Shown: positions 5,214 to 27,531, numbered from the stretch's first letter. The stretch: 64,000 bases of DNA from IMGVR_UViG_3300021057_000274:186001-250000; one strand, 5' to 3'. Numbers and translations: made by a program. Notes: generated by a model from the sequence alone, not told the origin.

Positions 5214-8200
5214 TTTTAGCGGAAGATACGGTGGCCTAAACGAGGTAGAGTGGTAACGCGCTGCTCCCTTCGTGACGCGCACGCCGGCGAACGCGCCGTT
5301 GTGATGCGCGGAGGTGCCGTTGGCGGAGCCGCCGATGGTAAACACGGGGGTACTTGCGATGTTAGAAGTGTCGATTCCTTGGCCTCGTAGAACTCCGTCG
5401 ATCCAAACGCGTACTAGCCCGAGGTGACGTTGACATACGATGTGATACCACTTGTTAAGTGTCGGAGTGAAATCGTTGAAGATGATGACGCTGTTCGTTT
5501 GGTGCCAGAGGATCCAACCACCCGCTGGATCGTATCTCGTGAAGGCCCACCCGTTATTTGCGTTCCAATTATAGTTGCAAGCGCCGAAGATGTGCACGTC
5601 AGCGGTGGACGAGTAAGAGGCCCAGGACACGAAAGCTTCTGCCGTGTAAGAGCCGGTGCCGAAGTCAAAGTCCGCCGAGGTAGAAGCGACCTCTAAGCGA
5701 CTTGTCCCGTTTAGAACTACGCTCCTCGCCGCCCCCTCCGGCGGGCTAGCGTCGGACCACACGACGGTTCCAGTCGTCGACAGAGCGCGCGCGTGCCTCG
5801 ACTGGTCGATGAACGTTGATCCGGTGCCGTTCTCGTTCGCCATGATCAAGACGGTGCTGTCATATTGCGGGTCGAGCACAAAGGACTCACCTGGAATTCC
5901 AGTGATGCCGTATCCCGACAAGACCGTGCCGCCGATCTTCCCAAACTTGACGGTCGTGATCGCGGTCGGCGTTGATCTGGTCGTGACAGACCCGTCTCCC
6001 AATTGCCCCGACGAGTTGGACCCCCAACCGAAGAGCGCTCCGTCGGCTCTCAGCGCGTGAGTCCAGTTCACTCCGGTCACGACGTCAACGAACTTCATGT
6101 TCTCGAGGCCGAGCGGCTGGACAGGGATGGGGTTGAACGACAGCGAGGATCCGTTACCGATCTGCGCGCTAGCGTTGTCACCCCACGCGAAGAGCTTTCC
6201 GTCTGAGCGCTTCGCGTACGTCGTCGAGTGGAGAGTCGCGATCGCGACCCAAGATGAAGTTCCGATCTGGATCGGTGATGAGCGATTGGTGAGGGTAGCG
6301 TCGCCTAGTTGATACAGAGAGTTCAATCCCCAGGCGAAGAGCGCTCCGTCAGAGCGGATCGCTACCGTATGTGACGTCGCGGCCGAAACTGCTGTCCACG
6401 ACGATGAACCGATCAACACCGGAGAGGAGCGCGAGGTCGTTGACCCGTCACCGAGCTGCCCGGATCCGTTAACCCCCCACGCGAAGAGAGCGCCGTCGAT
6501 GCGAATCGCCATGGAGGTGGTTGAGCCAGCACATACAGCCGTCCACGACGAAGTACCGATCTGGATCGGAGACGACTTAGGAGTGGTAGTGTTGTCACCG
6601 AGCTGCCCGCTTCCGTTACCGCCCCACGTGAAGAGCGCGCCGTCAGAGCGGATCGCTAGAACGTGCGACGTGCCGCCGCTGACGGCGGTCCACGACGAGG
6701 TGCCGACCTGCACAGGAGACGAGAAAGATGTAGTGCTTCCAAGGCCCAACCGTCCATCGTTTCCGATTCCCCACGAGAATAATCCGCCATCGGTGCGGAT
6801 CGCGTACGACGAGCCGCCGAAGCCAGACTCACCACCGTTTGAGATCGCGGTCCACGACGACGCACCGATCTGTACGGGAGAGGATCTAGCTCCAAGAGTT
6901 CCCTGGCCAAGTTGCCCCCAAGTGTCGATCCCCCACGCGAAGAGCAGACCGTCGTCGCGGATCGCTGTCATGTGATCATATCCAGCCGCGATCGCGATCC
7001 AAGAGCGCTCATCTAGCTTCGTTGGGAAGACGTACGATAAGCCGACCGTGGCACCCACAGACTTGTGGTCGCCGATGTGTCCAGAGGTGTTGTACCCCCA
7101 GAGGAAGAGCTTTCTGTCACCGCGAATCGCGGCGGCGTGGCTGATCGATTTCGTAGCGGATGGGAGGGCGTGCCAGCTCTCCGTACCAACCTGGATCGGT
7201 GAGCTAACGCGATGTGTCAAGACGCCGAGCTGGAAGCTCGCGTTACTCCCCCACACGAAGAGTGCGCCGTCAGAGCGGACCGCGGCGGTGTGGGAGCCGG
7301 TCGAGACCGCTGCCCAAGAGTTAACTCCCACTTGCACTGGGGATGACTCGTGTGAGTACTCGCTTGACTTACCGAGCTGCCCGAAGGAGTTGTCACCCCA
7401 AGTGAAGAGCGCGCCGTCAGAGCGGATCGCCGCCATGTTAGAGGCGTAGCTCCCAGAGATCATGACCCAGCTGCTCTTCGTCACTGGATCCCCGCTCGGC
7501 ACCAGGACCGGGGAAGACATGGTTGCGCTAGAGAGGGTGCCGAGCATGCCGCTAAGGTCGACGCCCCACGTGAAGAGCGCGCCGTCAGAGCGAATCGCTG
7601 ACGGCGTCGAGGTAGACGAACCAGTACCGATGAACGTCCAAGAGCTTGTGCCGATCTGCACCGGTGATGACTTGATAAAGCCAGTGATGGTAGCACCATG
7701 CCCCAGCTGTCCGTTTTGTCCGTCGCCCCAGGTAAAGACCGCTCCGTCGGTGCGAATCGCGAGAGAGGTGTGCTTAGCAGCTCCGACCATCGTCCAACTT
7801 GAGGTACCGATCTGCACCGGCGATGACTTAGTTACGGTAGATAGGTCACCGAGTTGCCCGGTGCCGTTGTAACCCCACGCGAAGAGAGCCCCGTCGGAGC
7901 GGATCGCGAGAGAGTGGTCGCTCCCCCCAGCGATCGCCGTCCAGGATGACGATCCGATAGGCACCGGTGAGGAGCGGTTCGTCGTCGACCCGTCACCTAA
8001 TTGTCCAGTTAAGTTGAGTCCCCACGTGAAGAGCGCGCCGTCAGAGCGGATCGCGATCGTGTGAGAACCTCCGCCAGAGATCGCTGTCCACGACGACGAA
8101 CCGATCTGTACCGGTGACGAGGTGTTGCTAGGAGACTCGTTTCCAAGTTGTCCCGCGTTATTCAACCCCCACGCGAAGAGCGCTCCGTCGGTTCGAATCG

Positions 8201-11200
8201 CGAGAGAGTGAGTACCCCCAGCAGAAACCGCGGTCCAGCTTGAAGATCCCAGTTGAATCGGAGAGTTGATGTTTCCTGCCGAACCGTTCCCGATCTGGCC
8301 GTTCGACCCAGCTCCCCATGCAAAGAGGCCGCCATCGGTGCGGAGAGCGATCGCGTGGTTGGCGCCCTTCGAAACGGCCGTCCAAGAGCTAGATCCGCCG
8401 ATTAACACCGGAGACGACTTAGCGACCGAGGTGCCGTCACCCAGCTGGTTGATCGAGTTATTGCCCCAACCCCAGAGTGACCCGTCGCTCTTGATTCCTG
8501 TGGATGAATCCGCTCCAGTTGAGACCTTTGACCAGCTTCTAAATTGTCCGAGAACCGTTGGGAATGACTTGTTCACGCGGATCCACTGTCCGTGCACGCC
8601 CTGAGTGCTGTTACCCCAGGTCATGAGAGCACCGTCGCTCCTGATCGCGCCGATGACCCGATCTCCCGCGGACACCGCGACGAAGCTCGAGGGGGTACGC
8701 TGGTGATTGTTGCCGAGCTGCCCCTTGCCCTCCGCCCCCATCGCGAAGAGACGTCCGTCGGTGCGGATCATGTAGCGAACTGACTGGTTCGTGTCGGCGT
8801 CAAGGTTGCTAGATCCGACCGCCGTCCAGCTAGATGACCCGATCTGTGTCGGGACGCTGTAGTTGACTCCAGAGCTGTCGATGTTTTCGACGGTGGAGTT
8901 GAAACCCCAAGCGAACAGCGCCCCATCGGCTCTCCGCGCGATCGTACCCGGAGCGTACGTCGCGACCGCTGTCCAAGAGTGAGAGCCGCTCACTAGCACC
9001 GGGGACGAGACAGCGGCGTTTGAGTTATTGCCGAGCTGGCCGTTAGTTCCAAACCCCCACGCGAACATCGCGCCGTCCGTGCGGATCGCGTGACCGTGGT
9101 CACCTGAGGTCGCCACGGCGGTCCAGCTTGAGGTTCCACCGATGAGGACCGGCGAGGACCTCGACGTGCTGCTGCTGTCTCCGAGCTGGCTGGAAAAGTT
9201 TGAGCCCCAGCCGTAGAGAGCGCCGTCTGAGCGGATCGCGTACGTCATTCCCTGGTTCGAGATCGTTGACGCTGCGACCGCGGTCCATGATGACGTGCCC
9301 ACCTGGGTCAAGAGCTTAGAATAGATGTTCGGAAAGTCAGAGAGACCTAGAGATGAGGGGCCGCCTCCCCACACGAAGATCGCGCCGTCGGTGCGGATCG
9401 CGGCCGTAGAGATGTCGAGCGCGGCGACGGCTGTCCAGGAGGAGGAGCCGATCTGCACGGGTGACGACTTGCTCACCGTCGTGCCGTCACCGAGGCGGCC
9501 GGTAGACCCGACGCCCCACGTGAAGAGCGCCCCGTCGGATCGGAGCGCGGCGGTGTGAAAGTTTCCGGTCGTGACGGCCGTCCAGCTCGAGGTGCCGATG
9601 CTCACGGGGCTCTGTTGAGTGACGATCGTGCCGTCACCTAGCTGACCGCTTCCGTTGTTCCCCCACGCGAAGAGCCGTCCGTCTGAGCGGATGCCCATCG
9701 CGTGCGACGGACCAGCCGCGAGAGCCGTCCACGACGAGGTGCCGACTTGCATCGGTGATAAAACGGTGCCAGGAGTGCCAGCTCCGAGCTGTCCTGAGTC
9801 GTTTGATCCCCAGCCGAAGAGAGCTCCCCCGAACCGGATTCCGTGACCCGTGGTGTATCCGATGCCGAGCGCCGTCCACGACGACGAGCCGATCTGCACG
9901 GGGGAAGACTTGTTAACTTGGGTGCCGTCGCCGAGCTGTCCGACTGAGTTATTCCCCCAGCCGAACAACGCTCCGTCGGAGCGAATTCCGATCGCGAACG
10001 GTGTAGAGGCGTGGAGACAGGTTGTTCTGATCGCGGTCCACGACGACGAGCCGATCGATACTGGCGAGGACCGGTTCGTCGTCGTACCGTCACCGACGGC
10101 GCCGCTTCCGTTGTAACCCCAGCAAAAGAGGGCGCCGTCGGTACGGATCGCGCCGACGGTGCCCATGTTGCCGCCGAAGCCAGAAGAGACAAATGTCCAA
10201 GACGACGTACCGACTTGAACTGGTGATGACCTCGCCCCGTTGGAGTCACCTAACTCCCCGCCGTCACCTGTCCCCCAGGTGAAGAGCCCGCCGTCTGTTC
10301 GGATCGCGAGAGTGTAGTATCCTCCGCACGCGACCATCGTCCACGAGGAGGTGCCGATCTGTACTGGCGAGAGCACGTTTCCAGAAGACGATCCGTTCCC
10401 CAAGCGACCTCGGTTAGCTGTCCCCCAAGTAAAGAGCGCTCCGTCGGAGCGGATCGCGGCGCTGTGAGCGTCACCGTTTGCGGTGTTTCCTCCGCCAGAG
10501 ATCGCCGTCCACGAGGAGGTGCCGATCTGGACGGGTGATGACCTGTTGGTTTGTGAACCGTCGCCAAGCTGTCCAGTGCTGTTCCACCCCCACGTGAAGA
10601 GGGCACCGTCGGAGCGAATCGCGACCATGTGCGAGCTACCTGCAGAGACCGCCGTCCACGATGACGTGCCGATCTGCACGGGTGACTGCTTGAAAGCGCT
10701 CGTCCCGTCACCTAACTGACCAACGTCATTGGTACCCCAGGTGAAGAGCGCGCCGTCAGACCTGATCGCACAGGTAAAGTTTCGTCCGCCGGCGATCGCC
10801 GTCCAGCTGCTTGCACCTACAGCGAGAGGCGACGTATGATAATTCGCGTTACCGATCTGCCCAAAGTCGTTATTTCCCCAACCGTAGAGGGCGCCGTCCG
10901 AGCGAATCGCGAGCGAGAACGAGGTGCCAGCTCTGACCGCGGTCCACGAGGAGACGCCGATCTGTACGGGGGAAGACTTGTTAACTTGCGTGCCGTCGCC
11001 GAGCTGACCGACGTTGTTCATTCCCCACGTGAAGAGCTTGCCGTCATTGCGGATCGCGAGGGTGTGGGCTAGTCCGAGTGAAACCGCGGTCCAGCTCGTG
11101 TCCCAACCTACCAGGGTTGGGGATGATTGATTCGTCGTCGCGTTGATTCCCAGCTGACCGTTTGCGTTGGCGCCCCACACGAAGAGCTTTCCGTTGGAGA

Positions 11201-14200
11201 TCGCGGCCAGGTGGGACCCTCGCCCTTGAGTGACCGCCGTCCATGACGAGGTACCGAGCTGGTGCGGCATGAATATCTCGTTAGACGTGCCGTCACCTAG
11301 CTCGCCGATGGATGAGGTCCCCCACGTGAAGAGCTTTCCGTCTGAGCGGATCGCTGATCTTGTCGTAGCACCTCCGCCGAGCGCGGTCCACGAGGAAGAT
11401 CCCACCTGCATCGGCGACGAGATTCCAGCCGTGGGGTGATAGTTTAACCCGAGCTCGCCGATCGAGTCAACTCCCCAGGTAAAGAGCTTTCCGTCTGAGC
11501 GGATCGCGACGCCGTGGCTCGCCCCCGCCGCGACCGCTGTCCATGAGGAAGAGCTGATCAAGACAGGAGATGAGTAGTTTAGACCTCCTGACGTGGTGTG
11601 CTGTAGCGTCACCGGGATCCCGAGCTGTCCCACCGTGTTGTTGCCCCAGCCGAAGAGCTTGCCGTCGAAACGAATCCCGATCGTCGAGCTGAGCCCGTGC
11701 GCGATCGCGACCCATGACTCGTTGCCAATCTGTGTCGGCGCCGACTCGCGCTTCAGAGAGTTGTTGCCGAGCTGACCCGCGCCGCCGTCACCCCACATGA
11801 AGAGCTTGTCGTCGCCGCTGATCGCCGAGAAGTGCGACATTCCGCCGACTCCCAGCTTCTTGAAGCTGAGATCAGACGCCACCTGGGTCGGTGAGGCCTT
11901 GACCTGAGAGAACGACATGTTGATGAAGCCCCAGGTGAAGAGCTTCTTGTCCGAGCGAATACCTGCCCCCTCGGTCAACCCAGCGGAGATCTCACGCCAC
12001 GTCAAGGTGGGTACTAGCACTGGAGACGACCTGGAGCTTGGAGCTCGACCGTCACCGATCGAGCCAGCCAGATTGGATCCCCAATTGAAGAGCCTGCCGT
12101 TCAGGTCGAGGCCTGACGAGTTGTCAGAGCTCGCGTGGCCGATCACGGACCAGCGCGAGAGGCCGACCTGGACGGGGCTTGAGTAACTAACGATGTCATC
12201 AAGACCAAGGCGTCCGCTCGCGCCGTTGCCCCACGCGAAGAGCAGACCGTCGCTCCTGATCGCCTTCGTCTGCGCGTTCCCTCTCGAGATCGCCGTCCAC
12301 GACGACGTGCCGACCTGTACCGGGGAGGAGCGGCTCGTCGTCGTTCCGTCACCGAGCTGGCCCAAGGAGTTGAGCCCCCAGGTAAAGAGGGCTCCGTCCT
12401 CTCTCAGGGCGCCGCTGTAGGAAGCTCCGCCCGCGACGGCGATCCATGAGGAGGTACCGACTTGCACGGGGCTAGAGCGGTTCGCCCCAGCGTCACCGAG
12501 CTGCCCAGACGAGTTCGATCCCCAGGTAAAGAGACCGCCGTCTGACCGAATTCCCAAGACGTGGTTGTTACCGCCGTCAACCACGATCCAAGAGGAGGTG
12601 CCGACCTGAACGGGTGACGAGCGCTCACCGGTCGTACCGTCGCCGAACTGTCCGTTGGCTCCGTCGCCCCAGCTGAAGAGCCCACCGTCCGCGCGAATCG
12701 CGACGGAGTAGTTAGCTCCGCACCCAGCGGTGATCGCGACCCAAGATGAGGTGCCGATCTGTACGGGTGAGGAGCTGTTTGAGATCGAGCTATTTCCTAG
12801 CTCGCCAGACGCGCCGCGCCCCCACGCGAAGAGCCTACCGTCGGAGCGAATCGCGAGCACGTGCTGTGACGCTGAGATCGCTGACCAGGTAGAAGTGCCG
12901 ATCTGCACGGGAGATGAGCGGTCGATCGTCGTGCCATCTCCGACCGCCCCGTTTGCGTTGTGGCCCCAGCCGAAGAGAGATCCGTCGGAACGGATCGCGA
13001 CGGTGAAGCTGTGACCTGACGCGACCTGGCTCCAACTCTTATAGCCGATCTGGACCGGCGACGAAGCTAACGAGGTCGCGATGCCGAACAAGTTGAAGGC
13101 GGATCCGTCTGACGCTGACCCCCACATGTACAGCTTGCCGTCCTTGATACCGCCAGTTGACTGATTTCCTGAGCTGACGGTCGCCCAAGACGAGAGTCCG
13201 ATCTGGATCGGTGATGATCGCGAGCTGATCTCACCGTCACCCAACCGGCCGTTCGTGTTGATCCCCCACGCGAAGAGCTTGCCGTCGACGTCGATCGCGT
13301 GCGAGGTGAGGGATCCAGCGTGAACCACCGCCCATGAGCTAGCTCCGATCGAGACTGGAGATGACCGAGCGGTGGTAGAGTCGTCACCGAGCTGCCCGCT
13401 TCCATTATTGCCCCACGCGAAGAGCTTGCCGTCGAGGCGAATCGCGAGGGTGTGATCGTCGGTTCCAGCGCTGACCCCGACCCAGCTAGAGGTGCCGATC
13501 TGTACCGGGGAAGACAGGTCAGGAGCAGCGGTACCGTTACCCAAGCGTCCGTTAGCTGCTGCACCCCAGGTAAACAGTCCGCCGTCAGAACGAATCGCGA
13601 CGCCGTGAGATCCAGCCAACGAGATCGCGGTCCACGACGACGTGCCGATCTGTACTGGCGATGATCGATTGGTGACGGATCCGTCACCAAGCTTTCCTGC
13701 GGTGTTCTCGCCCCAAGTAAAGAGGGAGCCGTCGGAGCGGATCGCGGCAGTCTGAAAGTTTCTAGCTGCGATCGCGATCCAGCTCGAAGTTCCGACCTGC
13801 GTTGGGCTAGAGATCGAGGTGGTGTTGCCAAGGCCGAGTTGCCCCTCGGTCCCTCGCCCCCACACGAAGAGAGCGCCGTCCTTTCGCAGAGCGGCCGAGT
13901 GCAAGCCACCGCAGGCGATCGCGGTCCAGCTTGACGCGCCGATCTGGAGGGGGCTCGAGAGCGACGCGGTGTCGTTGGAGCCCAAGCGCCCTTGCCCGCC
14001 GTTGCCCCACGCGAAGAGTCCCCCGTCGGAGCGCAGAGCGAGGGTGTGCGCCGAACCGAACGCTAGCGCGACCCAGCTTAGAGGATCATGTTGGCCGATC
14101 TGAACGGGTGACGAGCGATCATTGAGCAGGCCGTCACCGAGCTGCCCTGAGGAATTTCCTCCCCAAGCGTACAGGGATCCCTCTGAGTCGATGACGACCG

Positions 14201-14222
14201 CATAGCTGCCGACCGAGCTCAC
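5205..14222 (-). CDS. Giant RCC1/BLIP-II repeat protein (~50+ repeats) with C-terminal LamG/ConA-like domain; putative fibre/adhesin
   Basis: Repeated ~50-aa unit AIRSDGALFxWGxNxxGQLGDGxxxxxSSPVQIGTSSWTAVxxG; C-terminal DFDFGTGSYTAEAF..WYHIVCQR..VWIDG..GVRVTKGAARY. Confidence 0.9.
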   Translation of the reverse strand: MSSVGSYAVVIDSEGSLYAWGGNSSGQLGDGLLNDRSSPVQIGQHDPLSWVALAFGSAHTLALRSDGGLFAWGNGGQGRLGSNDTASLSSPLQIGASSWTAIACGGLHSAALRKDGALFVWGRGTEGQLGLGNTTSISSPTQVGTSSWIAIAARNFQTAAIRSDGSLFTWGENTAGKLGDGSVTNRSSPVQIGTSSWTAISLAGSHGVAIRSDGGLFTWGAAANGRLGNGTAAPDLSSPVQIGTSSWVGVSAGTDDHTLAIRLDGKLFAWGNNGSGQLGDDSTTARSSPVSIGASSWAVVHAGSLTSHAIDVDGKLFAWGINTNGRLGDGEISSRSSPIQIGLSSWATVSSGNQSTGGIKDGKLYMWGSASDGSAFNLFGIATSLASSPVQIGYKSWSQVASGHSFTVAIRSDGSLFGWGHNANGAVGDGTTIDRSSPVQIGTSTWSAISASQHVLAIRSDGRLFAWGRGASGELGNSSISNSSSPVQIGTSSWVAITAGCGANYSVAIRADGGLFSWGDGANGQFGDGTTGERSSPVQVGTSSWIVVDGGNNHVLGIRSDGGLFTWGSNSSGQLGDAGANRSSPVQVGTSSWIAVAGGASYSGALREDGALFTWGLNSLGQLGDGTTTSRSSPVQVGTSSWTAISRGNAQTKAIRSDGLLFAWGNGASGRLGLDDIVSYSSPVQVGLSRWSVIGHASSDNSSGLDLNGRLFNWGSNLAGSIGDGRAPSSRSSPVLVPTLTWREISAGLTEGAGIRSDKKLFTWGFINMSFSQVKASPTQVASDLSFKKLGVGGMSHFSAISGDDKLFMWGDGGAGQLGNNSLKRESAPTQIGNESWVAIAHGLSSTIGIRFDGKLFGWGNNTVGQLGIPVTLQHTTSGGLNYSSPVLISSSSWTAVAAGASHGVAIRSDGKLFTWGVDSIGELGLNYHPTAGISSPMQVGSSSWTALGGGATTRSAIRSDGKLFTWGTSSIGELGDGTSNEIFMPHQLGTSSWTAVTQGRGSHLAAISNGKLFVWGANANGQLGINATTNQSSPTLVGWDTSWTAVSLGLAHTLAIRNDGKLFTWGMNNVGQLGDGTQVNKSSPVQIGVSSWTAVRAGTSFSLAIRSDGALYGWGNNDFGQIGNANYHTSPLAVGASSWTAIAGGRNFTCAIRSDGALFTWGTNDVGQLGDGTSAFKQSPVQIGTSSWTAVSAGSSHMVAIRSDGALFTWGWNSTGQLGDGSQTNRSSPVQIGTSSWTAISGGGNTANGDAHSAAIRSDGALFTWGTANRGRLGNGSSSGNVLSPVQIGTSSWTMVACGGYYTLAIRTDGGLFTWGTGDGGELGDSNGARSSPVQVGTSSWTFVSSGFGGNMGTVGAIRTDGALFCWGYNGSGAVGDGTTTNRSSPVSIGSSSWTAIRTTCLHASTPFAIGIRSDGALFGWGNNSVGQLGDGTQVNKSSPVQIGSSSWTALGIGYTTGHGIRFGGALFGWGSNDSGQLGAGTPGTVLSPMQVGTSSWTALAAGPSHAMGIRSDGRLFAWGNNGSGQLGDGTIVTQQSPVSIGTSSWTAVTTGNFHTAALRSDGALFTWGVGSTGRLGDGTTVSKSSPVQIGSSSWTAVAALDISTAAIRTDGAIFVWGGGPSSLGLSDFPNIYSKLLTQVGTSSWTAVAASTISNQGMTYAIRSDGALYGWGSNFSSQLGDSSSTSRSSPVLIGGTSSWTAVATSGDHGHAIRTDGAMFAWGFGTNGQLGNNSNAAVSSPVLVSGSHSWTAVATYAPGTIARRADGALFAWGFNSTVENIDSSGVNYSVPTQIGSSSWTAVGSSNLDADTNQSVRYMIRTDGRLFAMGAEGKGQLGNNHQRTPSSFVAVSAGDRVIGAIRSDGALMTWGNSTQGVHGQWIRVNKSFPTVLGQFRSWSKVSTGADSSTGIKSDGSLWGWGNNSINQLGDGTSVAKSSPVLIGGSSSWTAVSKGANHAIALRTDGGLFAWGAGSNGQIGNGSAGNINSPIQLGSSSWTAVSAGGTHSLAIRTDGALFAWGLNNAGQLGNESPSNTSSPVQIGSSSWTAISGGGSHTIAIRSDGALFTWGLNLTGQLGDGSTTNRSSPVPIGSSSWTAIAGGSDHSLAIRSDGALFAWGYNGTGQLGDLSTVTKSSPVQIGTSSWTMVGAAKHTSLAIRTDGAVFTWGDGQNGQLGHGATITGFIKSSPVQIGTSSWTFIGTGSSTSTPSAIRSDGALFTWGVDLSGMLGTLSSATMSSPVLVPSGDPVTKSSWVMISGSYASNMAAIRSDGALFTWGDNSFGQLGKSSEYSHESSPVQVGVNSWAAVSTGSHTAAVRSDGALFVWGSNASFQLGVLTHRVSSPIQVGTESWHALPSATKSISHAAAIRGDRKLFLWGYNTSGHIGDHKSVGATVGLSYVFPTKLDERSWIAIAAGYDHMTAIRDDGLLFAWGIDTWGQLGQGTLGARSSPVQIGASSWTAISNGGESGFGGSSYAIRTDGGLFSWGIGNDGRLGLGSTTSFSSPVQVGTSSWTAVSGGTSHVLAIRSDGALFTWGGNGSGQLGDNTTTPKSSPIQIGTSSWTAVCAGSTTSMAIRIDGALFAWGVNGSGQLGDGSTTSRSSPVLIGSSSWTAVSAATSHTVAIRSDGALFAWGLNSLYQLGDATLTNRSSPIQIGTSSWVAIATLHSTTYAKRSDGKLFAWGDNASAQIGNGSSLSFNPIPVQPLGLENMKFVDVVTGVNWTHALRADGALFGWGSNSSGQLGDGSVTTRSTPTAITTVKFGKIGGTVLSGYGITGIPGESFVLDPQYDSTVLIMANENGTGSTFIDQSRHARALSTTGTVVWSDASPPEGAARSVVLNGTSRLEVASTSADFDFGTGSYTAEAFVSWASYSSTADVHIFGACNYNWNANNGWAFTRYDPAGGWILWHQTNSVIIFNDFTPTLNKWYHIVCQRHLGLVRVWIDGVLRGQGIDTSNIASTPVFTIGGSANGTSAHHNGAFAGVRVTKGAARYHSTSFRPPYLPLKFT

Positions 14223-21366: not shown

Positions 21367-23412
21367 TTATCTAAAGATCGGCGTTGACCACATCTCGCCG
21401 TTCGAAGTATACGAGCCGACGTGCAAGATTGGGATTTTAGTTGCCCCGTCAACGAAGTAGCGAATGAAGATCTTGTGCCCGTAGTAGTGAGAGTATACCT
21501 TTGGCAACTTTACGAAACCTTCTACCTGCCTCGTGAGCATGTCAAACCTATTGATCGCCATCTCACCCGTGTTTTCATAACAGATGAAGTACGCGTATCT
21601 TCCGCCGTTCGCCGCTACATCTTGCGTCGCGCTGTTCCCGTAGAGGGTGATCTGGGACGTCGTCCTGGGCATCCACGGAATGTTATCGATCCAAGCTCCG
21701 TTAGTTCCACCTGCTAAGTCAAAGACGTCAATCTGCGGGCCGCCACCCCTGAAGCTATAACAATACGAGTGGCGAACCGCCTTATCGGCGTCTGGAACGA
21801 TCGAGAACGATCCAAAGAAGTTGTGCCCTGAAGTTCTTGCCACCGATCTAGCGGCAAACCTCGTAGAGCTCCAAGTGTCAGCCGCCATCGACCCGATGGC
21901 GTACGCCGCGTAGACGTACGTGGTAGTGGTGTTTGAGTTTCCTTGGTAGATCAGAAAGTTTGGATACTCGATCACGTACTTGGCGGTCGAGGACGGAGTG
22001 ACAGCCCAGGCGGTTTCCATCGTGTAAACTGGAGATGCCCCAGCGGTGTGACTAGCGATGATGCCGCGCTGACCCACGGCGGTTGGAGTAGCCGTGTCCT
22101 CAACGATCCTGATCTGAAAGTTTCGATACTCGTTTCCGAGCACGCTAGCGTCACCGCTAGCAGCTTGACCTGTCAGAGAGCTAGCTCCAGACGCGGTGGC
22201 CGTGAGAGTCCCGAAGAAGCCGTCACTTGGGTTTCGGTTGTGCGGGACATACAGCTCATCCATCATGAACATGACCGGCTCAGATTGCGACGTGTAGTTG
22301 GTCGTTGACATCGTGCTAACGGCGCCGGTAACGATGTCATAGATGCGAAGGTTGCTCGTCGTGTACTGCGAGTAAATCTTGCCGCTCAAGATCTCGTACG
22401 TGTCGCCGCTCGCTGGGGTAAAGGTGAGCGCGGAATCTAGAGTTACGGTGATCGTCCCGCCGACAAAACCTTGATCCATAACCGGATTCGTCGTATAGGT
22501 AGTGGTGACCCTCGCTCTCACGTAGAACGCGCTGACGTTGCTGAGCGTGTTCGCAAACCAATCCGTGGGCATCGTCCATGTAACCTCGCGGCCGTTTGCT
22601 ACCGACGCGGTGAAGCTAGAGGTGGCATCCGAGACGCCAGACAAGGCGGTCCAAGCCGTTCCGTTCCAATACTCCCAAGCTACGACTCCGCCCACGCCAG
22701 CGGTTCCTGACGCGTAGTTGAAGACGAGCTTGCTAAACTTGGTGGGGAATCCAAACGCGGCGTAGTCTCCGACTACCTCTGATCCGGGAAAGAGAGCCCA
22801 ATCAGCGGTGGAAGAGTTGTTAGCCGCAGTGGTGGTGTTGGTAAACGAGCTCGGAGCTACCACTTGCCAAGTTTGGGTAAACTGAGTGTTGCCAGCGCTT
22901 CCCTCGGTGCTCGCGGTGATGATGCGCTCTTCTACCTTACCCGACCCTCCAGCCGAGCTTCCGATGACCCTGATCTTGTATCCACGCCCGTCTCCACGGT
23001 TCGCCAGAGCGTTGGCGCTTAGGATCGGGGGTACCGTCGGTGTAGGGGACCCAATCGGAGTCCACGTGATTCCTGTCGAGAGCACCACCTTGCTTGTCGT
23101 GTTGCCAGTAGTGATAGATCCACGAGGTCCGTGTGAGGGGGCGAAGACCGCCGTGCCGTCTGAGGATGCGCTAAACGACATCGTGGTAGACGACGTAGAT
23201 TGAATTTGGCGCTTCCATCCGTCGTTCTCTGGATTATACGCGTAGATGATCGAGCTTGAGCTCTGCCCGTAGAGATACATCAACGGGTGTTGATCAGCGT
23301 TGTTACGCATGTCATGAACATACCAGATCGCGTTCGTCTCCCAGTCATGGCGCGCTAGCTGCCGCCAGACCGGGATGTCGAGAAGGTTCTTAAATCCTAG
23401 CGTAGTAGCCAT
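21367..23412 (-). CDS. Putative fibre/receptor-binding structural protein (propeller-like with carbohydrate-binding-like insert)
   Basis: Thr/Ser/Gly-rich; two R.II.NT/HT...W..TP...S.Y.I units; insert with WEYWNGTAW..FYVRAR. Confidence 0.6.
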   Translation of the reverse strand: MATTLGFKNLLDIPVWRQLARHDWETNAIWYVHDMRNNADQHPLMYLYGQSSSSIIYAYNPENDGWKRQIQSTSSTTMSFSASSDGTAVFAPSHGPRGSITTGNTTSKVVLSTGITWTPIGSPTPTVPPILSANALANRGDGRGYKIRVIGSSAGGSGKVEERIITASTEGSAGNTQFTQTWQVVAPSSFTNTTTAANNSSTADWALFPGSEVVGDYAAFGFPTKFSKLVFNYASGTAGVGGVVAWEYWNGTAWTALSGVSDATSSFTASVANGREVTWTMPTDWFANTLSNVSAFYVRARVTTTYTTNPVMDQGFVGGTITVTLDSALTFTPASGDTYEILSGKIYSQYTTSNLRIYDIVTGAVSTMSTTNYTSQSEPVMFMMDELYVPHNRNPSDGFFGTLTATASGASSLTGQAASGDASVLGNEYRNFQIRIVEDTATPTAVGQRGIIASHTAGASPVYTMETAWAVTPSSTAKYVIEYPNFLIYQGNSNTTTTYVYAAYAIGSMAADTWSSTRFAARSVARTSGHNFFGSFSIVPDADKAVRHSYCYSFRGGGPQIDVFDLAGGTNGAWIDNIPWMPRTTSQITLYGNSATQDVAANGGRYAYFICYENTGEMAINRFDMLTRQVEGFVKLPKVYSHYYGHKIFIRYFVDGATKIPILHVGSYTSNGEMWSTPIFR

Positions 23413-23768
23413 TAAAAGATCCTAGAGCGCATCAAGGCTCCGAAGGCCGCGTTTCTGATCGGAGGATAGAGCATCGTGTTGGGGTCAGAGGAGGCACCGA
23501 GGTTCGTGACCGTCGAGATCGTTCCGCTGCTGATCGTGGTAGACAATGTCGTCGCGGCTTCTACGTTAACACGCATGCGTGCGTTCTGGTCGACCCACCC
23601 GGGTTTAGCAAGGGCGTAGAAGATCTGACGCAACGAGTGCGCGATGTCAGCCAACGTAAAGCGCTGGCGTTTTACCGTTTGGCCAGACTCGTCAACTCCC
23701 GCCTTCTCGGTATCAATGATCGGGCCAGTACCCTCTGGCCCGATCTGTACTCCCTGATTGACTGGCAT
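23412..23768 (-). CDS. Small fibre-module protein
   Basis: Coupled ORF (TAATG overlaps) in a late operon; Thr-rich central beta segment. Confidence 0.65.
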   Translation of the reverse strand: MPVNQGVQIGPEGTGPIIDTEKAGVDESGQTVKRQRFTLADIAHSLRQIFYALAKPGWVDQNARMRVNVEAATTLSTTISSGTISTVTNLGASSDPNTMLYPPIRNAAFGALMRSRIF

Positions 23769-24010
23769 TAGCTAAGCCCCTCTAACCTATTGATCTCAGT
23801 GATGATCGACGCTTCTAACAGAGAACTGATCGCGTCAGCTTGCTCCGGGAGGAGGCGAAGATCTCTCGCCGATTTCCCGACGGCCAGACCGGTCTCGTCA
23901 CGCAACACGTAGATGACGTGTAGCATCCAGTTGCGAGGACCCTGCTGATTAGCAATGATCGTCTCGACGTTCGCGAGCGTGACGTCAGCGATCTGGACCG
24001 ACTTAGGCAT
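23768..24010 (-). CDS. Hypothetical protein
   Basis: 80-aa ORF downstream of the late promoter at 24038-24043. Confidence 0.6.
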   Translation of the reverse strand: MPKSVQIADVTLANVETIIANQQGPRNWMLHVIYVLRDETGLAVGKSARDLRLLPEQADAISSLLEASIITEINRLEGLS

Positions 24011-24037
24011 CTACTTTTCCGTTAAAGTTCATGCTCG

Positions 24038-24043
24038 TATTTA
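24038..24043 (-). promoter_or_regulatory. Late promoter (TAAATA)
   Basis: cATAAATAc overlapping the endonuclease stop codon. Confidence 0.65.
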
Positions 24044-24751
24044 TGTAGATGTGCTAGAGTCCTGATTTGCCCATCTTCCCCGCCAACCCGACTCACGCTT
24101 CAGCCGAAGAGTCTCCTTGATCCGCGCGATCGTCTCAGGACTCCTGGGTCGACCCGTTAGCTTCTCGATCACGCTCACTCTCTGCTCTTCAGTCCAGGGA
24201 GTGCCCGGTTTGCCCCTCTTCACGAGACCCAGCTTGCGCTTGTGCTCATCGGTGCGCGTGGGCATCTTCTTTCCGAGATGGGACTCTGACATCTTTCGCT
24301 TCGTCTCGTCAGAGTGGAGGGGGCGAGGTTTGCCCTTTTGAGACAAGCTGAGGTTTAGGAGGTGCTCCGCGGTCCGGGGTGGCTTCTTTTGACCGCGGTT
24401 CTTGACGGAGATCTTCTCACCTACGGTCTTCAGCGAGGAGTTAACTCCGTGCCAGTGACCTGTACTAATCTTGAGATTATAGTACCGCTTTCCAATTTCA
24501 ACGTCTTTGATCATACCGAGCCATCTAAATTCTTCCTTTAGAAGCTCAGCTCTATCTTGGATGTTCGAAACGAGAATTCGACGCTTGAAGTCTTGAGGGC
24601 GTCGTTTTCGCGAGATATACATCCACTTAGAGCTACAGACATAGCCATCATTTTGGTCGCCCCAGTGTGACCCGATGTAGTAGCGGTTGTGCTTCTTGTC
24701 ACGCCAGATGTATATGAAACCAGAGGTAGATTGCTTTTTAGAAGTAGAAAT
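24041..24751 (-). CDS. GIY-YIG homing endonuclease (Seg-like) with NUMOD3 repeats; probable ATT start
   Basis: The frame upstream of the track ATG (24622) encodes GFIYIWRDKKHNRYYIGSHWG. There is no ATG/GTG/TTG between that motif and the upstream in-frame TAA; GGAG lies 8 nt before ATT at 24751. HSDETKRKMSESHLGK repeats. Confidence 0.85.
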   Translation of the reverse strand: MSTSKKQSTSGFIYIWRDKKHNRYYIGSHWGDQNDGYVCSSKWMYISRKRRPQDFKRRILVSNIQDRAELLKEEFRWLGMIKDVEIGKRYYNLKISTGHWHGVNSSLKTVGEKISVKNRGQKKPPRTAEHLLNLSLSQKGKPRPLHSDETKRKMSESHLGKKMPTRTDEHKRKLGLVKRGKPGTPWTEEQRVSVIEKLTGRPRSPETIARIKETLRLKRESGWRGRWANQDSSTST

Positions 24752-24779
24752 GAAAATAGCTCCAAGGGTTGCTTAGAGC

Positions 24780-24785
24780 TATTTA
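24780..24785 (-). promoter_or_regulatory. Late promoter (TAAATA)
   Basis: gATAAATAg upstream of the homing endonuclease. Confidence 0.65.
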
Positions 24786-24807
24786 TCAGACGACTAAAAA
24801 GTGTTAC

Positions 24808-25236
24808 TCAGTCTTCCGTGATCGTCGACGACGAGGTCAGGATCGGGGTCACTCCGTTCGCCACCGAGATGTTCGGTGTCACGGTCCCCTTATAGAGCAC
24901 CTTGCCTGCGCCTGAGGACAACGTGCCGACCGCCCAGTGAGTGATCGTCGCGGCGCCGCCCGTGCACTGCGGAAAGTTGATGTTCGCGACAGGGGAGACG
25001 CTGTTCGAGGTTACCACCCATCCGCCCGTGGTGCGTGCGACCGCGACCCGAGCGTACGAGGTGTACGACGTCTCGTTGGTCGTCTGTGAGCCACCCTCAC
25101 CGACATCCGCGGTGTGCAGACTGACGTGGAGGTTGGTGAGCGGCGATGACGCCGCGTTGTCCGCAATGTTCGCGATCGCGGTAGCGTTGAAGATGAGCCT
25201 CAACAGATCGTTTTCGAAGGTATCGCCCTTAGAAAT
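24808..25236 (-). CDS. Small phage tail/fibre-associated structural protein; probable ATT start
   Basis: SKGDTFENDLL..IFN..LHVSLHTAD.GE..NETSYTSYARVAVAR..FPQCTGG..ITH family pattern; GGAGGT 5 nt before ATT at 25236. Confidence 0.75.
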   Translation of the reverse strand: MSKGDTFENDLLRLIFNATAIANIADNAASSPLTNLHVSLHTADVGEGGSQTTNETSYTSYARVAVARTTGGWVVTSNSVSPVANINFPQCTGGAATITHWAVGTLSSGAGKVLYKGTVTPNISVANGVTPILTSSSTITED

Positions 25237-25250
25237 GATACACCTCCACA

Positions 25251-25304
25251 TAAATAATTGATCAAGTTACATTGCTTGATCAACTTGGATTCAACCTCTA
25301 TTTA
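25251..25304. promoter_or_regulatory. Opposed pair of late promoters (+ 25251-25256, - 25299-25304) with a 9-bp inverted repeat between them
   Basis: cataaata...ttgatcaag-N8-cttgatcaa...tatttatg. Confidence 0.6.
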
Positions 25305-26071
25305 TGTCATGTCAATACTTCGGATTTGTTTACCTATGGCGGGACCGAAAGCGTAAACGTTATTACATTGGCTCTCATAGAGGCCGAATCGATGACGGCT
25401 ATATCTCTTCATCGATTTGGATGCGTAGAACTTATCATCGACGTCCAGAAGATTTCAAGCGTCGAATTTTGGTTTATTGCTTTGAAGAGAGCAAGAAAGC
25501 TCTTCATGCTCTAGAACAAGTCTGGCTTGATAAGATCAAGAACGATGAGCTTGGAAAACGCTATTTCAACCTCAAGAAAGCTGCAAGAGGTGGGCAAACT
25601 GACTCTTCAGAAAATATCTCGCGTAAGCAAAAGCTCTCTTGGACTCCAGAAAGAAAAGCCAAGTGGGTCGCTAAGATGGCAGAGTGGCGTGATCGTGACC
25701 CTACCGCTAAGGCAAAGCTCGCGACCATGGTCGGGCGTACCCACTCAATATCAGTGTTAGAAAAGATCGGAGCTGGCAATAAAGGTAAGATCATGTCGAA
25801 CGAAGTGAAGGCCATCATGTCAGAAAAGGCTCAAGCTAGAGCTCACTTAACCGCAGAACGAAATAAACAGCTACATGCTGCTGGCAAGATCGGAATGAGA
25901 GGACGTCAACACTCGGCTGAGACCAAGGCCAAGATGTCTGAAGCAAACCGACTCAGGTGGGCAGCGAAGCGAACTCAAAAAGGCGCCAGGAAGATTAAAC
26001 CGATAACTCTAGACAGCTTGAAAGGCATGATCTCGGCGATCGCCGAAGCTAGAGCTACTGCTCAGCCCTGA
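25304..26071 (+). CDS. GIY-YIG homing endonuclease (Seg-like) with NUMOD3 repeats, antisense to the tail operon
   Basis: GFVYLWRDRKRKRYYIGSH..DGYISSS; HSAETKAKMSEA; lower GC than the flanks. Confidence 0.85.
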   Translation: MSCQYFGFVYLWRDRKRKRYYIGSHRGRIDDGYISSSIWMRRTYHRRPEDFKRRILVYCFEESKKALHALEQVWLDKIKNDELGKRYFNLKKAARGGQTDSSENISRKQKLSWTPERKAKWVAKMAEWRDRDPTAKAKLATMVGRTHSISVLEKIGAGNKGKIMSNEVKAIMSEKAQARAHLTAERNKQLHAAGKIGMRGRQHSAETKAKMSEANRLRWAAKRTQKGARKIKPITLDSLKGMISAIAEARATAQP

Positions 26072-27531
26072 TACTTCGCATTCCGTGGCGGTTGGCAACT
26101 CGCGTCCTCTGAGCGGTCCCAGGACTCGTGCTTCGGCACGACCATCTTCGGCTTGACCTGGTCAGCGCCGATGCCTGCCGCGGCCGTCGCCGCCGTCGCG
26201 CCGCCTGCTCCTCCAGTCGTCTCGATCGGTACGTTGGCCGACGATCCGATCGGCCCAACCTTCAGGCCAGTGCTGCTCAAGCTCGTCGTCATCGAGCCGC
26301 CCGACAAGTTAATCAATCCACCAGAGCCGTCAAGCTTCAGGGTGCCGCCGACCGCCTTGACGTCGACGTCGTTCTTTCCAGAGATCGTGACGCTACGAGC
26401 GTCGGCGCGGATGTCGACCCCGTGCGCCGCGTTGACGTGGATCTGACTGGTGGATGATCCGGCCTCCTCGGCGTGGTCGCGCAAGAGCCCGATCGGCTGG
26501 CCAGAGTGCGGCGGCATCGAGCAGACCTCACGCTCCGGGATCGCGCTGCCGGTCGGCCCGTTCGTCGTCTTCAAGTGGATGTCTCGCGAGGCGGTCACCT
26601 TGATGTTGGCCTGCTCGGAGAGGAGCTGAATTCCTAGCTTCCCCTGGATCTTGATCCCGCGCTGCTCTGACACCAGGTTGATCCGCTTCTTGGCGACCAG
26701 GTTGATGTTCGAGTCCGAGTAGAAGTTGATGTCGTTCTCGCTGTGAACGTTGTACTTTCCAGCCCCGTACTGGTTGACCGTACCGGATCCCTCGTCGAGC
26801 TCGAGGTAGCTTCGGCCGCGAGCCGTCGAGATGTAGATCCGCTCGTTCGTGTCATCGATCAAGATCTGACTGCCCGCGGTCGTCCGGATCCGCACGCGGC
26901 AGCGCTCGTCGATGTCAGACATCATCCAGTAATGGCCACCCGGTGTCTTGAAGACGTACATCTGCGAGTCCGCCTTCTCGGGCTCATGCGGCTTGGGCGC
27001 GTAACCGTTATCGGTCGGCTTGTTCTTGTTCTTGTTCGAGGGGTGCGCGATCGAGCGCTCGTACCCACCGATCGTGCGATAGTTGGGATCCTCGGGGCCG
27101 TGCCCCGCCTCGCGCATGTTCTCAACTGTCGGGAGCTCGTTGAGGGACTTGTAAATCCCAGACTCGTCGATGTCGGTCTTGGTCCCCTCGACCGCTTGTG
27201 GGAGGGTGCGGTTGAGCTCTGGCTGGTAGAGACAACCCATCCAAAAGCGGGTGCTCGGGTCACTCTCGAGCGTGCCGACTAGCACCTGCGCTCCGTTCTT
27301 TGGGATCGCCCAGAAACCGTACGCGGTGATTCCGCTCACCTGGTCGTGCTCACGGCCGACCTTTGGGTCAGCTGTCACCCCGCCGAACGGAGAAACGTAA
27401 CGCGCCCACGGCAGGTCCTCCACCTTGAAGTTATACGTGTCAGACGCTGGGATCCAGACCTGGAGGCGTCCCTCTTGCATGGGGTCTGCGTTGTTCTTGA
27501 CGACGCCGATCGAGAGAGTGAGTCCGCTCAT
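26062..27531 (-). CDS. gp5: Baseplate central spike, gp5/VgrG-like (OB fold + beta-helix; no lysozyme domain seen)
   Basis: GVVKNNADPMQEGRLQVWIP..LPWARYVSP..P.NGAQVLV; KTPGGH..MSD..RIRTTAGSQILIDD. Confidence 0.75.
   Translation of the reverse strand: MSGLTLSIGVVKNNADPMQEGRLQVWIPASDTYNFKVEDLPWARYVSPFGGVTADPKVGREHDQVSGITAYGFWAIPKNGAQVLVGTLESDPSTRFWMGCLYQPELNRTLPQAVEGTKTDIDESGIYKSLNELPTVENMREAGHGPEDPNYRTIGGYERSIAHPSNKNKNKPTDNGYAPKPHEPEKADSQMYVFKTPGGHYWMMSDIDERCRVRIRTTAGSQILIDDTNERIYISTARGRSYLELDEGSGTVNQYGAGKYNVHSENDINFYSDSNINLVAKKRINLVSEQRGIKIQGKLGIQLLSEQANIKVTASRDIHLKTTNGPTGSAIPEREVCSMPPHSGQPIGLLRDHAEEAGSSTSQIHVNAAHGVDIRADARSVTISGKNDVDVKAVGGTLKLDGSGGLINLSGGSMTTSLSSTGLKVGPIGSSANVPIETTGGAGGATAATAAAGIGADQVKPKMVVPKHESWDRSEDASCQPPRNAKYQG

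What the first reader, a model, noticed from the sequence alone, without database searches (positions are those of the whole stretch)
24745..25247. Two adjacent genes appear to initiate at ATT
Seen: the endonuclease's catalytic GFIY..YIG segment lies upstream of its first ATG, with no ATG/GTG/TTG before the upstream in-frame stop. GGAG-N8-ATT (24751) is ideally placed. The neighbouring structural gene has GGAGGT-N5-ATT (25236) followed by SKGDTFEND; an in-frame ATG at 25251 exists but has no SD. Both contexts read cATT TCT A. Established: AUU starts are rare and discriminated by IF3 (infC, pcnB). Inference: deliberate translational damping, or a phage/host with relaxed start selection. Standard gene callers would truncate the nuclease.
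Basis: partly seen in the sequence, partly recalled or inferred. Interest (0 to 1): 0.6.

Follow-up and report, generated by a model that had tools for sequence, protein, structure and literature searches.

The report
Two phage genes starting at ATT
In a 389-kb soil jumbo phage, a homing-nuclease gene and the neighbouring virion-protein gene both carry ATT exactly where all their relatives carry the start codon, and the phage also encodes its own start-codon proofreading factor (IF3), whose gene starts at ATA, so this is probably weak, factor-sensitive translation rather than an error.

Summary
On the minus strand, a GIY-YIG/NUMOD3 homing endonuclease (HEG1, 24041-24751) has its catalytic GFIY..YYIG segment upstream of its first ATG, with no ATG, GTG or TTG after the upstream stop. 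GGAG-N8-ATT is the only plausible start.

The Gp80-like virion gene (24808-25236) has GGAGGT-N5-ATT. That ATT aligns to Met1 (ATG or GTG) in 78 of 85 related loci, and 116 of the 120 nearest proteins are exactly 142 aa, the length the ATT start gives.

Independent assemblies of two DNA runs agree over both ATT codons. An RNA-library contig agrees over the Gp80 one.

New context:
- HEG1's SD and the first base of its ATT sit in a -17 kcal/mol hairpin. The hairpin's 5' arm carries an ATAAATA motif like the T4 late promoter. This is the T4 I-TevI/segB/mobE type of control.
- The in-frame ATG at 25251 is the complement of the same motif, which faces the second, divergent nuclease gene.
- The genome encodes IF3, whose gene starts at ATA where its closest relative has ATG.

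A genome-wide screen found only these three such starts among about 431 genes, so start selection is not generally relaxed. Whether translation really begins at the ATT codons is inferred, not shown.

The parts
24041..24751 (-). HEG1: free-standing GIY-YIG / NUMOD3 homing endonuclease gene read from ATT (236 aa)
   Evidence: Pfam NUMOD3 4e-8 and PHROG 314 'homing endonuclease' 4.7e-19. The alignment keeps every column that is invariant across six homologues. All 119 relatives have a canonical Met 2-21 aa before GF[IV]Y.
24749..24751 (-). ATT, proposed start codon of HEG1
   Evidence: It is the only near-cognate codon at a workable distance (8 nt) from an SD, and there is no ATG, GTG or TTG between the upstream stop and the ATG at 24622. 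It leaves 10 residues before GFIY, and some relatives have 8-12.
24760..24763 (-). GGAG Shine-Dalgarno of HEG1, inside the 3' arm of the hairpin
24751..24788 (-). Hairpin with 16 pairs (13-bp core at 24784-24754), -17.2 kcal/mol, followed by a T-rich tail. It is terminator-like after the Gp80-like gene and buries the HEG1 SD and the first base of ATT.
   Evidence: Terminator-like hit. Fold: z = -5.4, 0 of 200 shuffles fold as well.
24780..24786 (-). ATAAATA motif (like the T4 late promoter) in the 5' arm of the HEG1 hairpin
   Evidence: The motif occurs 42 times in the genome against 14.5 expected, is the most frequent of its 21 same-composition permutations, and 23 of 42 copies lie in the 15.6% of the genome that is non-coding, p = 6e-9. 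Promoter function and the transcription start are inferred.
24808..25236 (-). Gp80-like virion protein gene read from ATT (142 aa)
   Evidence: Pfam PF23140 at 52.5 bits against a cut-off of 27. PHROG 240 'head protein'. 116 of the 120 nearest homologues are exactly 142 aa and 109 begin MSKG.
25234..25236 (-). ATT at the ancestral Met1 position of the Gp80-like gene
   Evidence: It aligns to the annotated ATG in 5 of 5 GenBank phages. In 80 IMG/VR loci it aligns to ATG in 69 and GTG in 4, and none has ATT.
25242..25247 (-). GGAGGT Shine-Dalgarno, 5 nt before the ATT
   Evidence: Homologues carry an SD at the same distance from their ATG.
25249..25251 (-). In-frame ATG, the alternative start giving a 147-aa product. 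It is the complement of the CAT in the plus-strand CATAAATA motif.
   Evidence: There is no SD upstream, it lies 4 nt after a hairpin, and the four extra codons score as non-coding (-1.8).
25256..25285 (.). Palindromic hairpin (11 pairs) between the two divergent genes
25299..25305 (-). ATAAATA motif 63 nt upstream of the Gp80 ATT. Its preceding CAT is the complement of the ATG of HEG2.
25250..25256 (+). ATAAATA motif facing HEG2
25304..26071 (+). HEG2: second, divergent GIY-YIG/NUMOD3 endonuclease gene, a paralogue of HEG1, with a normal ATG start
   Evidence: (53% identity over residues 10-98).

Best explanation
Both ATT codons are genuine. Each sits at the position that is the start codon in every sampled relative, behind a correctly spaced Shine-Dalgarno sequence. 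They most likely act as weak AUU initiation codons that are sensitive to IF3.

For the homing endonuclease HEG1, AUU is the only way to make a protein with the catalytic GIY-YIG half. It is one of three damping layers:
1. A terminator-like hairpin follows the upstream gene.
2. The same hairpin buries the SD and the first base of AUU.
3. The start codon itself is poor.

A late-promoter-like ATAAATA in the 5' arm of the hairpin would produce late transcripts that lack that arm and so expose the site, as in T4 I-TevI, segB and mobE.

For the Gp80-like virion gene, starting at AUU behind GGAGGU gives the family's canonical 142-aa protein. The in-frame AUG 15 nt upstream is best explained as part of the promoter-like motif of the divergent nuclease gene. 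It may also give a minor or alternative 147-aa form.

The phage carries its own IF3 gene, which starts at AUA, the hallmark of IF3 autoregulation. Output from all three genes would therefore follow IF3 activity in the infected cell.

Shown: the sequence, the homology of the start positions, the hairpin, the motif enrichment, and the IF3 gene. Inferred: actual initiation at AUU, promoter function, and the coupling to IF3.
For: - Sequence anatomy.
- Gp80-like gene: the ATT aligns to the annotated Met1 in 5 of 5 GenBank phages and to ATG or GTG in 73 of 80 IMG/VR loci. 116 of the 120 nearest proteins are 142 aa long.
- HEG1: 119 of 119 relatives start 2-21 aa before GF[IV]Y. HEG1 keeps all invariant columns and has no internal stops.
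- The letters are identical in two independent DNA assemblies, and in an RNA-library contig over the Gp80 ATT. Another RNA-library contig lies inside HEG1 (24327-24521).
- Hairpin: -17.2 kcal/mol, z = -5.4.
- ATAAATA: 42 copies against 14.5 expected, with 23 of 42 in non-coding DNA, p = 6e-9.
- The T4 precedent for RBS-sequestering hairpins combined with late promoters: PMC2988022.
- Genome screen: only HEG1 and infC have coding sequence in front of their first canonical start together with an SD followed by ATT, ATA or ATC. The Gp80 ATT is the only other SD+ATT at a gene's start.
- Phage IF3: both Pfam domains are present and it matches E. coli IF3 at 1.7e-51. The first ATG would remove 25 residues. 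GAGGT-N5-ATA aligns to the ATG of its closest relative.
- AUU-led mRNAs are the ones specifically depressed by excess IF3: PMC5499595.
Against: - There are no ribosome or protein data, so initiation at AUU is inferred.
- Neither ATT is conserved: 0 of 85 Gp80 relatives have it, and no close relative or second strain of this phage exists to test conservation.
- Only about 28% of clear starts in this genome have a GGAG or GAGG SD. An SD-less ATG at 25251 is therefore not abnormal, and if the ATAAATA at 25305 is the promoter, that ATG would be in the transcript.
- The GGAG of HEG1 is part of a terminator-like stem and might be there for that reason alone.
- An intact ORF with a dead start codon is also what a freshly inactivated homing endonuclease looks like.
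- IF3 genes in other huge phages start with ATG, GTG or TTG, so the ATA may be only a leftover from a bacterial donor.
Confidence: 0.5

Rival explanations
1. Recent start-codon loss without function. HEG1 is a freshly dead homing endonuclease (ATG to ATT), as expected in the decay phase of the homing cycle. The Gp80-like gene lost its ATG too and is rescued by the in-frame ATG at 25251, giving a 147-aa protein.
For: - ATT is one substitution away from ATG.
- The ATT is unique to this genome among 85 Gp80 loci.
- No relative of HEG1 uses a non-canonical start.
- SD-less ATG starts are the majority in this genome.
- An in-frame canonical codon within the 10 open upstream codons is expected by chance about 40% of the time (my estimate).
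Against: - Two identical G-to-T changes in the start codons of adjacent genes, plus ATA in infC, among about 431 genes is unlikely to be independent accident.
- HEG1 shows no other lesion and keeps an elaborate control region.
- A 5-residue N-terminal extension is foreign to the family, where 116 of 120 are exactly 142 aa.
- The four extra codons score as non-coding.
- The ATG is explained by the CATAAATA motif on the other strand.
Confidence: 0.3
2. By-product of homing. The conserved start region of the Gp80-like gene is, or overlaps, the recognition or cleavage site of one of the two flanking endonucleases. ATT would then be part of the cleavage-resistant allele that travels with the nuclease gene, so expression from AUU or from the upstream AUG is a tolerated cost rather than a design.
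For: - Among 80 related loci, none has a GIY-YIG gene within 3 kb of the Gp80-like gene and none has ATT. Only this genome has both.
- The MSKGDTFEND start is extremely conserved, which is the kind of site homing enzymes choose.
- The two initiation regions share SD..TCATTTCTA.
- Resistant alleles next to free-standing endonuclease genes are described for T4 (PMC2988022).
Against: - No cleavage site is known.
- A single co-occurrence is not a statistic.
- It does not explain the ATT of HEG1 itself or the ATA of infC.
Confidence: 0.12
3. Sequencing or assembly artefact: the true letters are ATG.
For: The genome comes from a metagenome assembly, and the two DNA runs may be the source samples.
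Against: Logan's independent assemblies of both DNA runs (depth 17 and 33) and a contig from an RNA library of another study show 0 differences. Two errors that both hit start codons are implausible.
Confidence: 0.02
4. HEG1 is entered from another frame or start. Either ribosomes initiate at the TTG at 24765 and slip back one base on the A-run (CTAAAAAG), or only the internal ATG at 24622 is used and yields a DNA-binding fragment without nuclease activity.
For: The TTG at 24765 opens a 75-codon frame. A lysine tRNA could re-pair one base back on AAAAA. Internal ATGs exist, and the public gene call uses one.
Against: The TTG has no SD and lies in the hairpin. The A-run is not a canonical slippery heptamer and has no downstream stimulator. 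An internal start would waste the intact, conserved catalytic half.
Confidence: 0.04

Closest known systems
E. coli infC (and pcnB) AUU start codons; IF3 autoregulation
   Same: A non-canonical AUU- or AUA-type start sits behind a normal SD. Excess IF3 specifically depresses AUU-led mRNA (PMC5499595). The phage's own infC has the same feature.
   Different: Here the AUU codons are in a mobile nuclease gene and a virion protein gene of a phage. They are not conserved in relatives, and dependence on IF3 is untested.
Hairpin-controlled homing endonuclease genes of T4-like phages (I-TevI, I-TevII, I-TevIII, segB, Aeh1 mobE)
   Same: The SD lies about 8 nt before the start and is sequestered in a stable hairpin. 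A late-promoter-like TATAAATA-type motif is placed so that late transcripts would lack the 5' arm. The gene is a free-standing GIY-YIG endonuclease between late genes (PMC2988022).
   Different: The T4 endonuclease genes start with AUG (mobA with GUG). Here the start is AUU, an extra layer of damping. The transcription start is not mapped, and the phage is unrelated to T4 by the proteins I compared.
Streptomyces sigR GTC start repressed by IF3 (PMC5472188)
   Same: It is a precedent for a gene other than infC whose output is set by IF3 through a non-canonical start codon (abstract seen).
   Different: It is a cellular regulator, a different codon, and experimentally shown.
IF1 and IF3 genes in huge phages (Al-Shayeb et al. 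2020, PMC7162821)
   Same: A jumbo phage carries IF3 together with many tRNAs.
   Different: In the passages I searched, that paper did not link phage IF3 to phage genes with non-canonical starts. In the other IF3-bearing viral contigs I looked at, infC starts with ATG, GTG or TTG.

Membership tests
GIY-YIG homing endonuclease with NUMOD3 (Seg-like, free-standing) | N-terminal GIY..YIG motifs with the conserved Arg, Glu and Asn columns | tested here: met
   GFIY and YYIG are present. All invariant columns of a 6-sequence alignment are kept (G18 F19 Y21 .. Y31 Y32 G34 .. R57 R58 .. E81 .. N99). This holds only if the gene is read from upstream of the first ATG.
GIY-YIG homing endonuclease with NUMOD3 (Seg-like, free-standing) | Curated profile match | tested here: inconclusive
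   NUMOD3 scores 33.5 bits against a cut-off of 20.4, and PHROG 314 'homing endonuclease' gives 4.7e-19. Pfam GIY-YIG itself did not report HEG1, and HEG2 scored 17 bits, below the 22.6 cut-off.
GIY-YIG homing endonuclease with NUMOD3 (Seg-like, free-standing) | Site-specific DNA cleavage and homing | not testable with these tools
   Indirect evidence only: patchy presence. None of 80 related Gp80 loci has such a gene nearby.
IF3-controlled non-canonical start (infC type) | ATT, ATA or ATC at the position homologous to Met1, behind a correctly spaced SD | tested here: met
   Gp80-like gene. HEG1. Phage infC.
IF3-controlled non-canonical start (infC type) | The unusual codon is conserved among relatives | tested here: not met
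   0 of 85 Gp80 relatives and 0 of 119 HEG relatives have it. The closest IF3 relative has ATG. No close strain is available.
IF3-controlled non-canonical start (infC type) | Expression falls when IF3 rises | not testable with these tools
   Needs reporter or toeprint assays.
T4-type hairpin-regulated homing endonuclease gene | RBS sequestered in a stable hairpin | tested here: met
   -17.2 kcal/mol, z = -5.4. GGAG and the first base of ATT are paired.
T4-type hairpin-regulated homing endonuclease gene | A late promoter placed so that late transcripts lack the 5' arm | tested here: inconclusive
   ATAAATA at 24786-24780 lies in the 5' arm, and the motif is enriched and mostly intergenic genome-wide. 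The transcription start is not mapped, and I did not look for a late sigma factor.
Gp80 (PF23140) virion protein | Profile match above cut-off and the family's length and N-terminus | tested here: met
   52.5 bits against 27. The ATT start gives 142 aa, as in 116 of the 120 nearest members.
Translation initiation factor IF3 | IF3_N and IF3_C domains, full length | tested here: met
   100.9 and 110.8 bits. It aligns to E. coli IF3 residues 12-179.

The most novel reading that the evidence does not exclude
The phage runs its own start-codon-stringency circuit. Its IF3 belongs to a derived phage clade with an inter-domain linker 4 residues shorter and Lys at the position of E. coli Arg131. It would autoregulate through its AUA start and set when and how much the AUU-led phage genes (a potentially toxic nuclease and a virion protein) are translated. 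That would make start-codon fidelity a viral control point.
Probability: 0.15. Interest if true: 0.85.

Novelty: new variant of a known kind. Interest (0 to 1): 0.6.

Why it matters
AUU starts are very rare and, in bacteria, are best understood as the handle by which IF3 controls its own synthesis. Here, three genes of one virus have ATT or ATA at the ancestral Met position: the virus's own IF3, a homing nuclease and a structural gene. This offers a concrete, testable case for two questions. One is what phage-encoded initiation factors are for, which has been open since they were reported in huge phages. The other is whether start-codon choice is used by mobile nuclease genes as a further brake.

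There is also a practical lesson. The standard calls for all three genes are wrong: the nuclease is cut to 157 aa, IF3 is cut to 142 aa, and the virion protein is extended by 5 aa.

Tried and rejected
- Megablast of the locus against GenBank phages found no match.
- An exact-pattern search for other strains carrying either initiation region found only the source contig in the JGI metagenomes and nothing in IMG/VR.
- A search for relatives of the phage through the baseplate-hub protein gave at most 23-27% identity over long matches, and no syntenic relative, so the boundaries of the nuclease insertions could not be drawn.
- Frameshift entry from the TTG at 24765 was judged unlikely: no SD, the codon lies inside the hairpin, and there is no canonical slippery site.
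- I tried to link a sigma-70-like promoter (TTGATC-18-AATTAT, 8 of 12 matches) to the RNA contig end at 25247, which would exclude the ATG from the mRNA. I dropped this because contig ends carry no information, the match is below the scan's threshold, and the enriched ATAAATA motif sits further upstream.
- No phage initiator tRNA that could read AUU was found. The two tRNA(CAT) genes lack initiator features.
- General TAG recoding is not supported: in-frame coding continuity across TAG is no more frequent than across TAA.
- The extended similarity of the two initiation regions and a 16-nt inverted repeat bracketing Gp80 plus HEG1 (I7) are at chance level apart from the SD and the 9-mer.
- A sequence search of solved structures with the Gp80-like protein found nothing useful.
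- Other candidate non-canonical starts from the screen (ATC at genome 286497, ATA at 70333, ORF at 352566) are not supported by domain positions.

Full report
**What the window is.** The window is bases 186001-250000 of a 389,331-bp virus record, which IMG/VR labels 'provirus' and CheckV rates 98% complete. It comes from a 395,730-bp soil metagenome contig. It is a jumbo phage at 58% G+C with strong third-position G+C in its genes. It carries 48 tRNA genes. I found no close relative in GenBank phages or IMG/VR. The finding lies in a minus-strand structural module that includes a baseplate hub and virion proteins.

**The observation.** Both genes are on the minus strand.

HEG1:
- The frame is open from a TAA stop at 24775-24773.
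- It reads ..GAIFISTSKKQSTS-GFIYIWRDKKHNRYYIGSH.. and reaches its first ATG, GTG or TTG only at 24622, well inside the catalytic domain.
- GGAG (24763-24760) lies 8 nt before ATT (24751-24749).

Gp80-like gene:
- GGAGGT (25247-25242) lies 5 nt before ATT (25236-25234), followed by SKGDTFEND.
- An in-frame ATG lies at 25251.

The shared TCATTTCTA occurs nowhere else in the genome on either strand.

The letters stand. Logan's own assemblies of two soil DNA runs (depth 17 and 33; possibly the source samples) match 23400-26400 without a single difference. Four small contigs from a metatranscriptome of another study are also identical. One covers the Gp80 ATT and SD (25079-25247) and one lies inside HEG1 (24327-24521). 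An RNA library can contain DNA, so transcription is suggested, not shown.

**Do relatives' Met1 map to the ATT codons? Yes.**

Gp80-like gene (Pfam PF23140):
- Five annotated GenBank phages start their CDS exactly at the codon aligned to the ATT.
- In 80 IMG/VR loci that codon is ATG in 69 and GTG in 4. Most have an SD and no upstream in-frame start.
- In the 5.8-billion-protein collection the family has thousands of members. Of the 120 nearest, 116 are exactly 142 aa and 109 begin MSKG.
- The window's own entry is the only one beginning MWRC, at 147 aa.

HEG1:
- All 119 non-self relatives begin with a canonical codon 2-21 residues (mostly 2-8) before GF[IV]Y. Several read like the window's peptide, for example MARKQHTSGFVY...
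- The window's own public call is a 157-aa fragment without the catalytic half.
- HEG1 keeps every invariant column and has no internal lesion.

**How unusual this is within the genome.** I called 431 genes with a codon-usage model trained on the genome's long ORFs. Only a few ORFs have coding-like sequence before their first canonical start:
- HEG1.
- An ORF at genome 68009 (see below).
- An ORF at 99020.

Listing every SD-preceded ATT, ATA, ATC or CTG near gene starts gave only three that sit at or before the first canonical start in a non-coding context. They are the two ATT codons of the finding and an ATA at genome 99023. Start selection is therefore not generally relaxed. The screen misses genes without an SD, and only about 28% of unambiguous starts here have GGAG or GAGG, against a 10% background.

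**The third gene is the phage's own IF3.**
- The ORF at genome 99023-99526 carries IF3_N and IF3_C and aligns to E. coli IF3 residues 12-179 at E = 1.7e-51.
- Its first ATG would delete 25 residues of the N-domain. GAGGT-N5-ATA sits just after the upstream stop.
- Its neighbours are not the bacterial thrS-infC-rpmI-rplT set. They are a Bax1-I protein, NUDIX, a saccharopine-dehydrogenase-like protein, AdoMet decarboxylase and hypothetical proteins.
- Its closest relative (68% identity) lies on a phage-like 148-kb contig beside an anti-Pycsar Apyc1-like protein and a DNA ligase. It starts with ATG exactly where the window has ATA.
- The next hits are Burkholderiales and Betaproteobacteria at about 59% identity.
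- The two phage proteins share a linker 4 residues shorter than the four bacterial IF3 sequences aligned. They also share RFKGRE where the bacterial ones have RFRGRE.
- That Arg is E. coli R131 by the numbering of chain 8jsg_A. I recall, from memory only, that an R131 mutant has relaxed start-codon discrimination.
- Huge phages are known to carry IF3 (PMC7162821). In the other IF3-bearing viral contigs I examined, the gene has a canonical start.
- IF3 discriminates against AUU, and infC's AUU or AUC is the target of its autoregulation. In vitro, excess IF3 depresses AUU-led mRNA far more than AUG, GUG or UUG (PMC5499595).

**Anatomy around the two starts.**

Upstream of HEG1:
- The RNA folds into a hairpin of 16 pairs (24788-24751): -17.2 kcal/mol, z = -5.4, with no shuffle of 200 folding as well.
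- It is followed by a T-rich tail, and the terminator scan flags it.
- Its 3' arm contains GGAG, and its last pair is the A of ATT.
- Its 5' arm contains GATAAATA.

The ATAAATA motif:
- It occurs 42 times in the genome against 14.5 expected.
- It is by far the commonest of its 21 same-composition permutations.
- 23 of the 42 copies lie in the 15.6% of the genome that is non-coding (p = 6e-9).
- Many copies lie 10-120 nt upstream of a same-strand gene.
- It resembles the T4 late promoter TATAAATA (established knowledge).

If transcription starts about 6 nt after the motif, as in T4, late transcripts would begin near 24774 and lack nearly the whole 5' arm, freeing the SD. This is the arrangement described for I-TevI, I-TevII, I-TevIII, segB and mobE (PMC2988022). 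That review also states that T4's free-standing endonuclease genes start with AUG, except mobA with GUG.

This control region argues that the site is a real translation start, and that AUU is one more brake on a potentially harmful enzyme.

Upstream of the Gp80-like gene:
- The 68-nt spacer to the divergent HEG2 (25304-26071, plus strand, a paralogue of HEG1) holds a palindromic hairpin (25285-25256).
- It also holds two divergent CATAAATA motifs.
- The CAT of the minus-strand motif is the complement of HEG2's ATG.
- The CAT of the plus-strand motif is the complement of the ATG at 25251.

The upstream in-frame ATG therefore has a reason to exist that has nothing to do with translating Gp80. 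It lies 4 nt after the hairpin, with the SD downstream of it, and the four codons it would add score as non-coding. None of this excludes its use.

**Link to the nucleases.** In none of the 80 related Gp80 loci is a GIY-YIG gene found within 3 kb, and in none is the start ATT. This genome alone has both. The ATT of Gp80 may therefore have arrived with, or been selected because of, the nuclease invasion. One possibility is that it is part of a cleavage-resistant allele of a highly conserved target. I list this as a rival explanation. It cannot be tested here.

**Verdict.**
- That HEG1 is translated from AUU rather than being freshly dead: about 0.55.
- That Gp80 is made at least in part from AUU: about 0.55.
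- That the three ATT/ATA starts form a circuit with the phage IF3: about 0.15-0.25.

AUU starts, hairpin-controlled homing endonuclease genes and phage IF3 are each known. Their combination in one phage is new to my searches, so I rate it a new variant of a known kind.

Noticed in passing
outside the window: genome (G000) 99023-99526, + strand (locus L015:5023-5526): The phage encodes a full-length translation initiation factor IF3 whose gene has no canonical start before the N-domain. GAGGT-N5-ATA aligns to the ATG of its closest (phage) relative. The public gene call is truncated to 142 aa. The protein has a linker 4 residues shorter than the four bacterial IF3 sequences aligned and Lys at the position of E. 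coli Arg131.
   Followed up: yes
outside the window: genome 123181-123255 (tRNA); genome 67997-68335 (locus L016:4997-5335): One of the 48 phage tRNA genes has the anticodon CTA, an amber suppressor. An ORF with a strong coding score has no canonical start for 62 codons and is preceded in frame by GGAG-N6-ATG AAG TCC TAG. This makes it a candidate for read-through of TAG at codon 4. A genome-wide check gave no sign of general TAG recoding.
   Followed up: partly
whole genome; in the window at 24044, 24786, 25305 (- strand) and 25250 (+ strand), among others: ATAAATA, which resembles the T4 late promoter TATAAATA, occurs about three times more often than expected and mostly in intergenic DNA upstream of same-strand genes. 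It is a probable promoter motif of this otherwise orphan jumbo phage.
   Followed up: partly
window 25249-25306: This is a compact divergent control region. Two CATAAATA motifs on opposite strands each supply, as their complement, an ATG on the other strand: HEG2's start at 25304 and the in-frame ATG at 25251. A shared 11-pair palindromic hairpin lies between them.
   Followed up: partly
window 24745-24753 and 25230-25238: The 9-mer TCATTTCTA occurs only at the two ATT sites in 389 kb. In the Gp80 leader it can pair weakly with the SD through G-U pairs (-5 kcal/mol, not better than shuffles). I have no explanation for the identity.
   Followed up: partly
window 5205-14222, - strand: A 3005-aa ORF lies in the structural region. 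I did not examine it.
   Followed up: no
outside the window: genome 94569-102748 (locus L015): Next to the IF3 gene are genes for a Bax1-I family membrane protein, NUDIX, a saccharopine-dehydrogenase-like protein and S-adenosylmethionine decarboxylase. I read the last two as polyamine-related auxiliary genes.
   Followed up: no
whole genome: Only about 28% of unambiguous gene starts have a GGAG or GAGG Shine-Dalgarno sequence, against a 10% background. Most translation starts of this phage are therefore SD-independent.
   Followed up: partly
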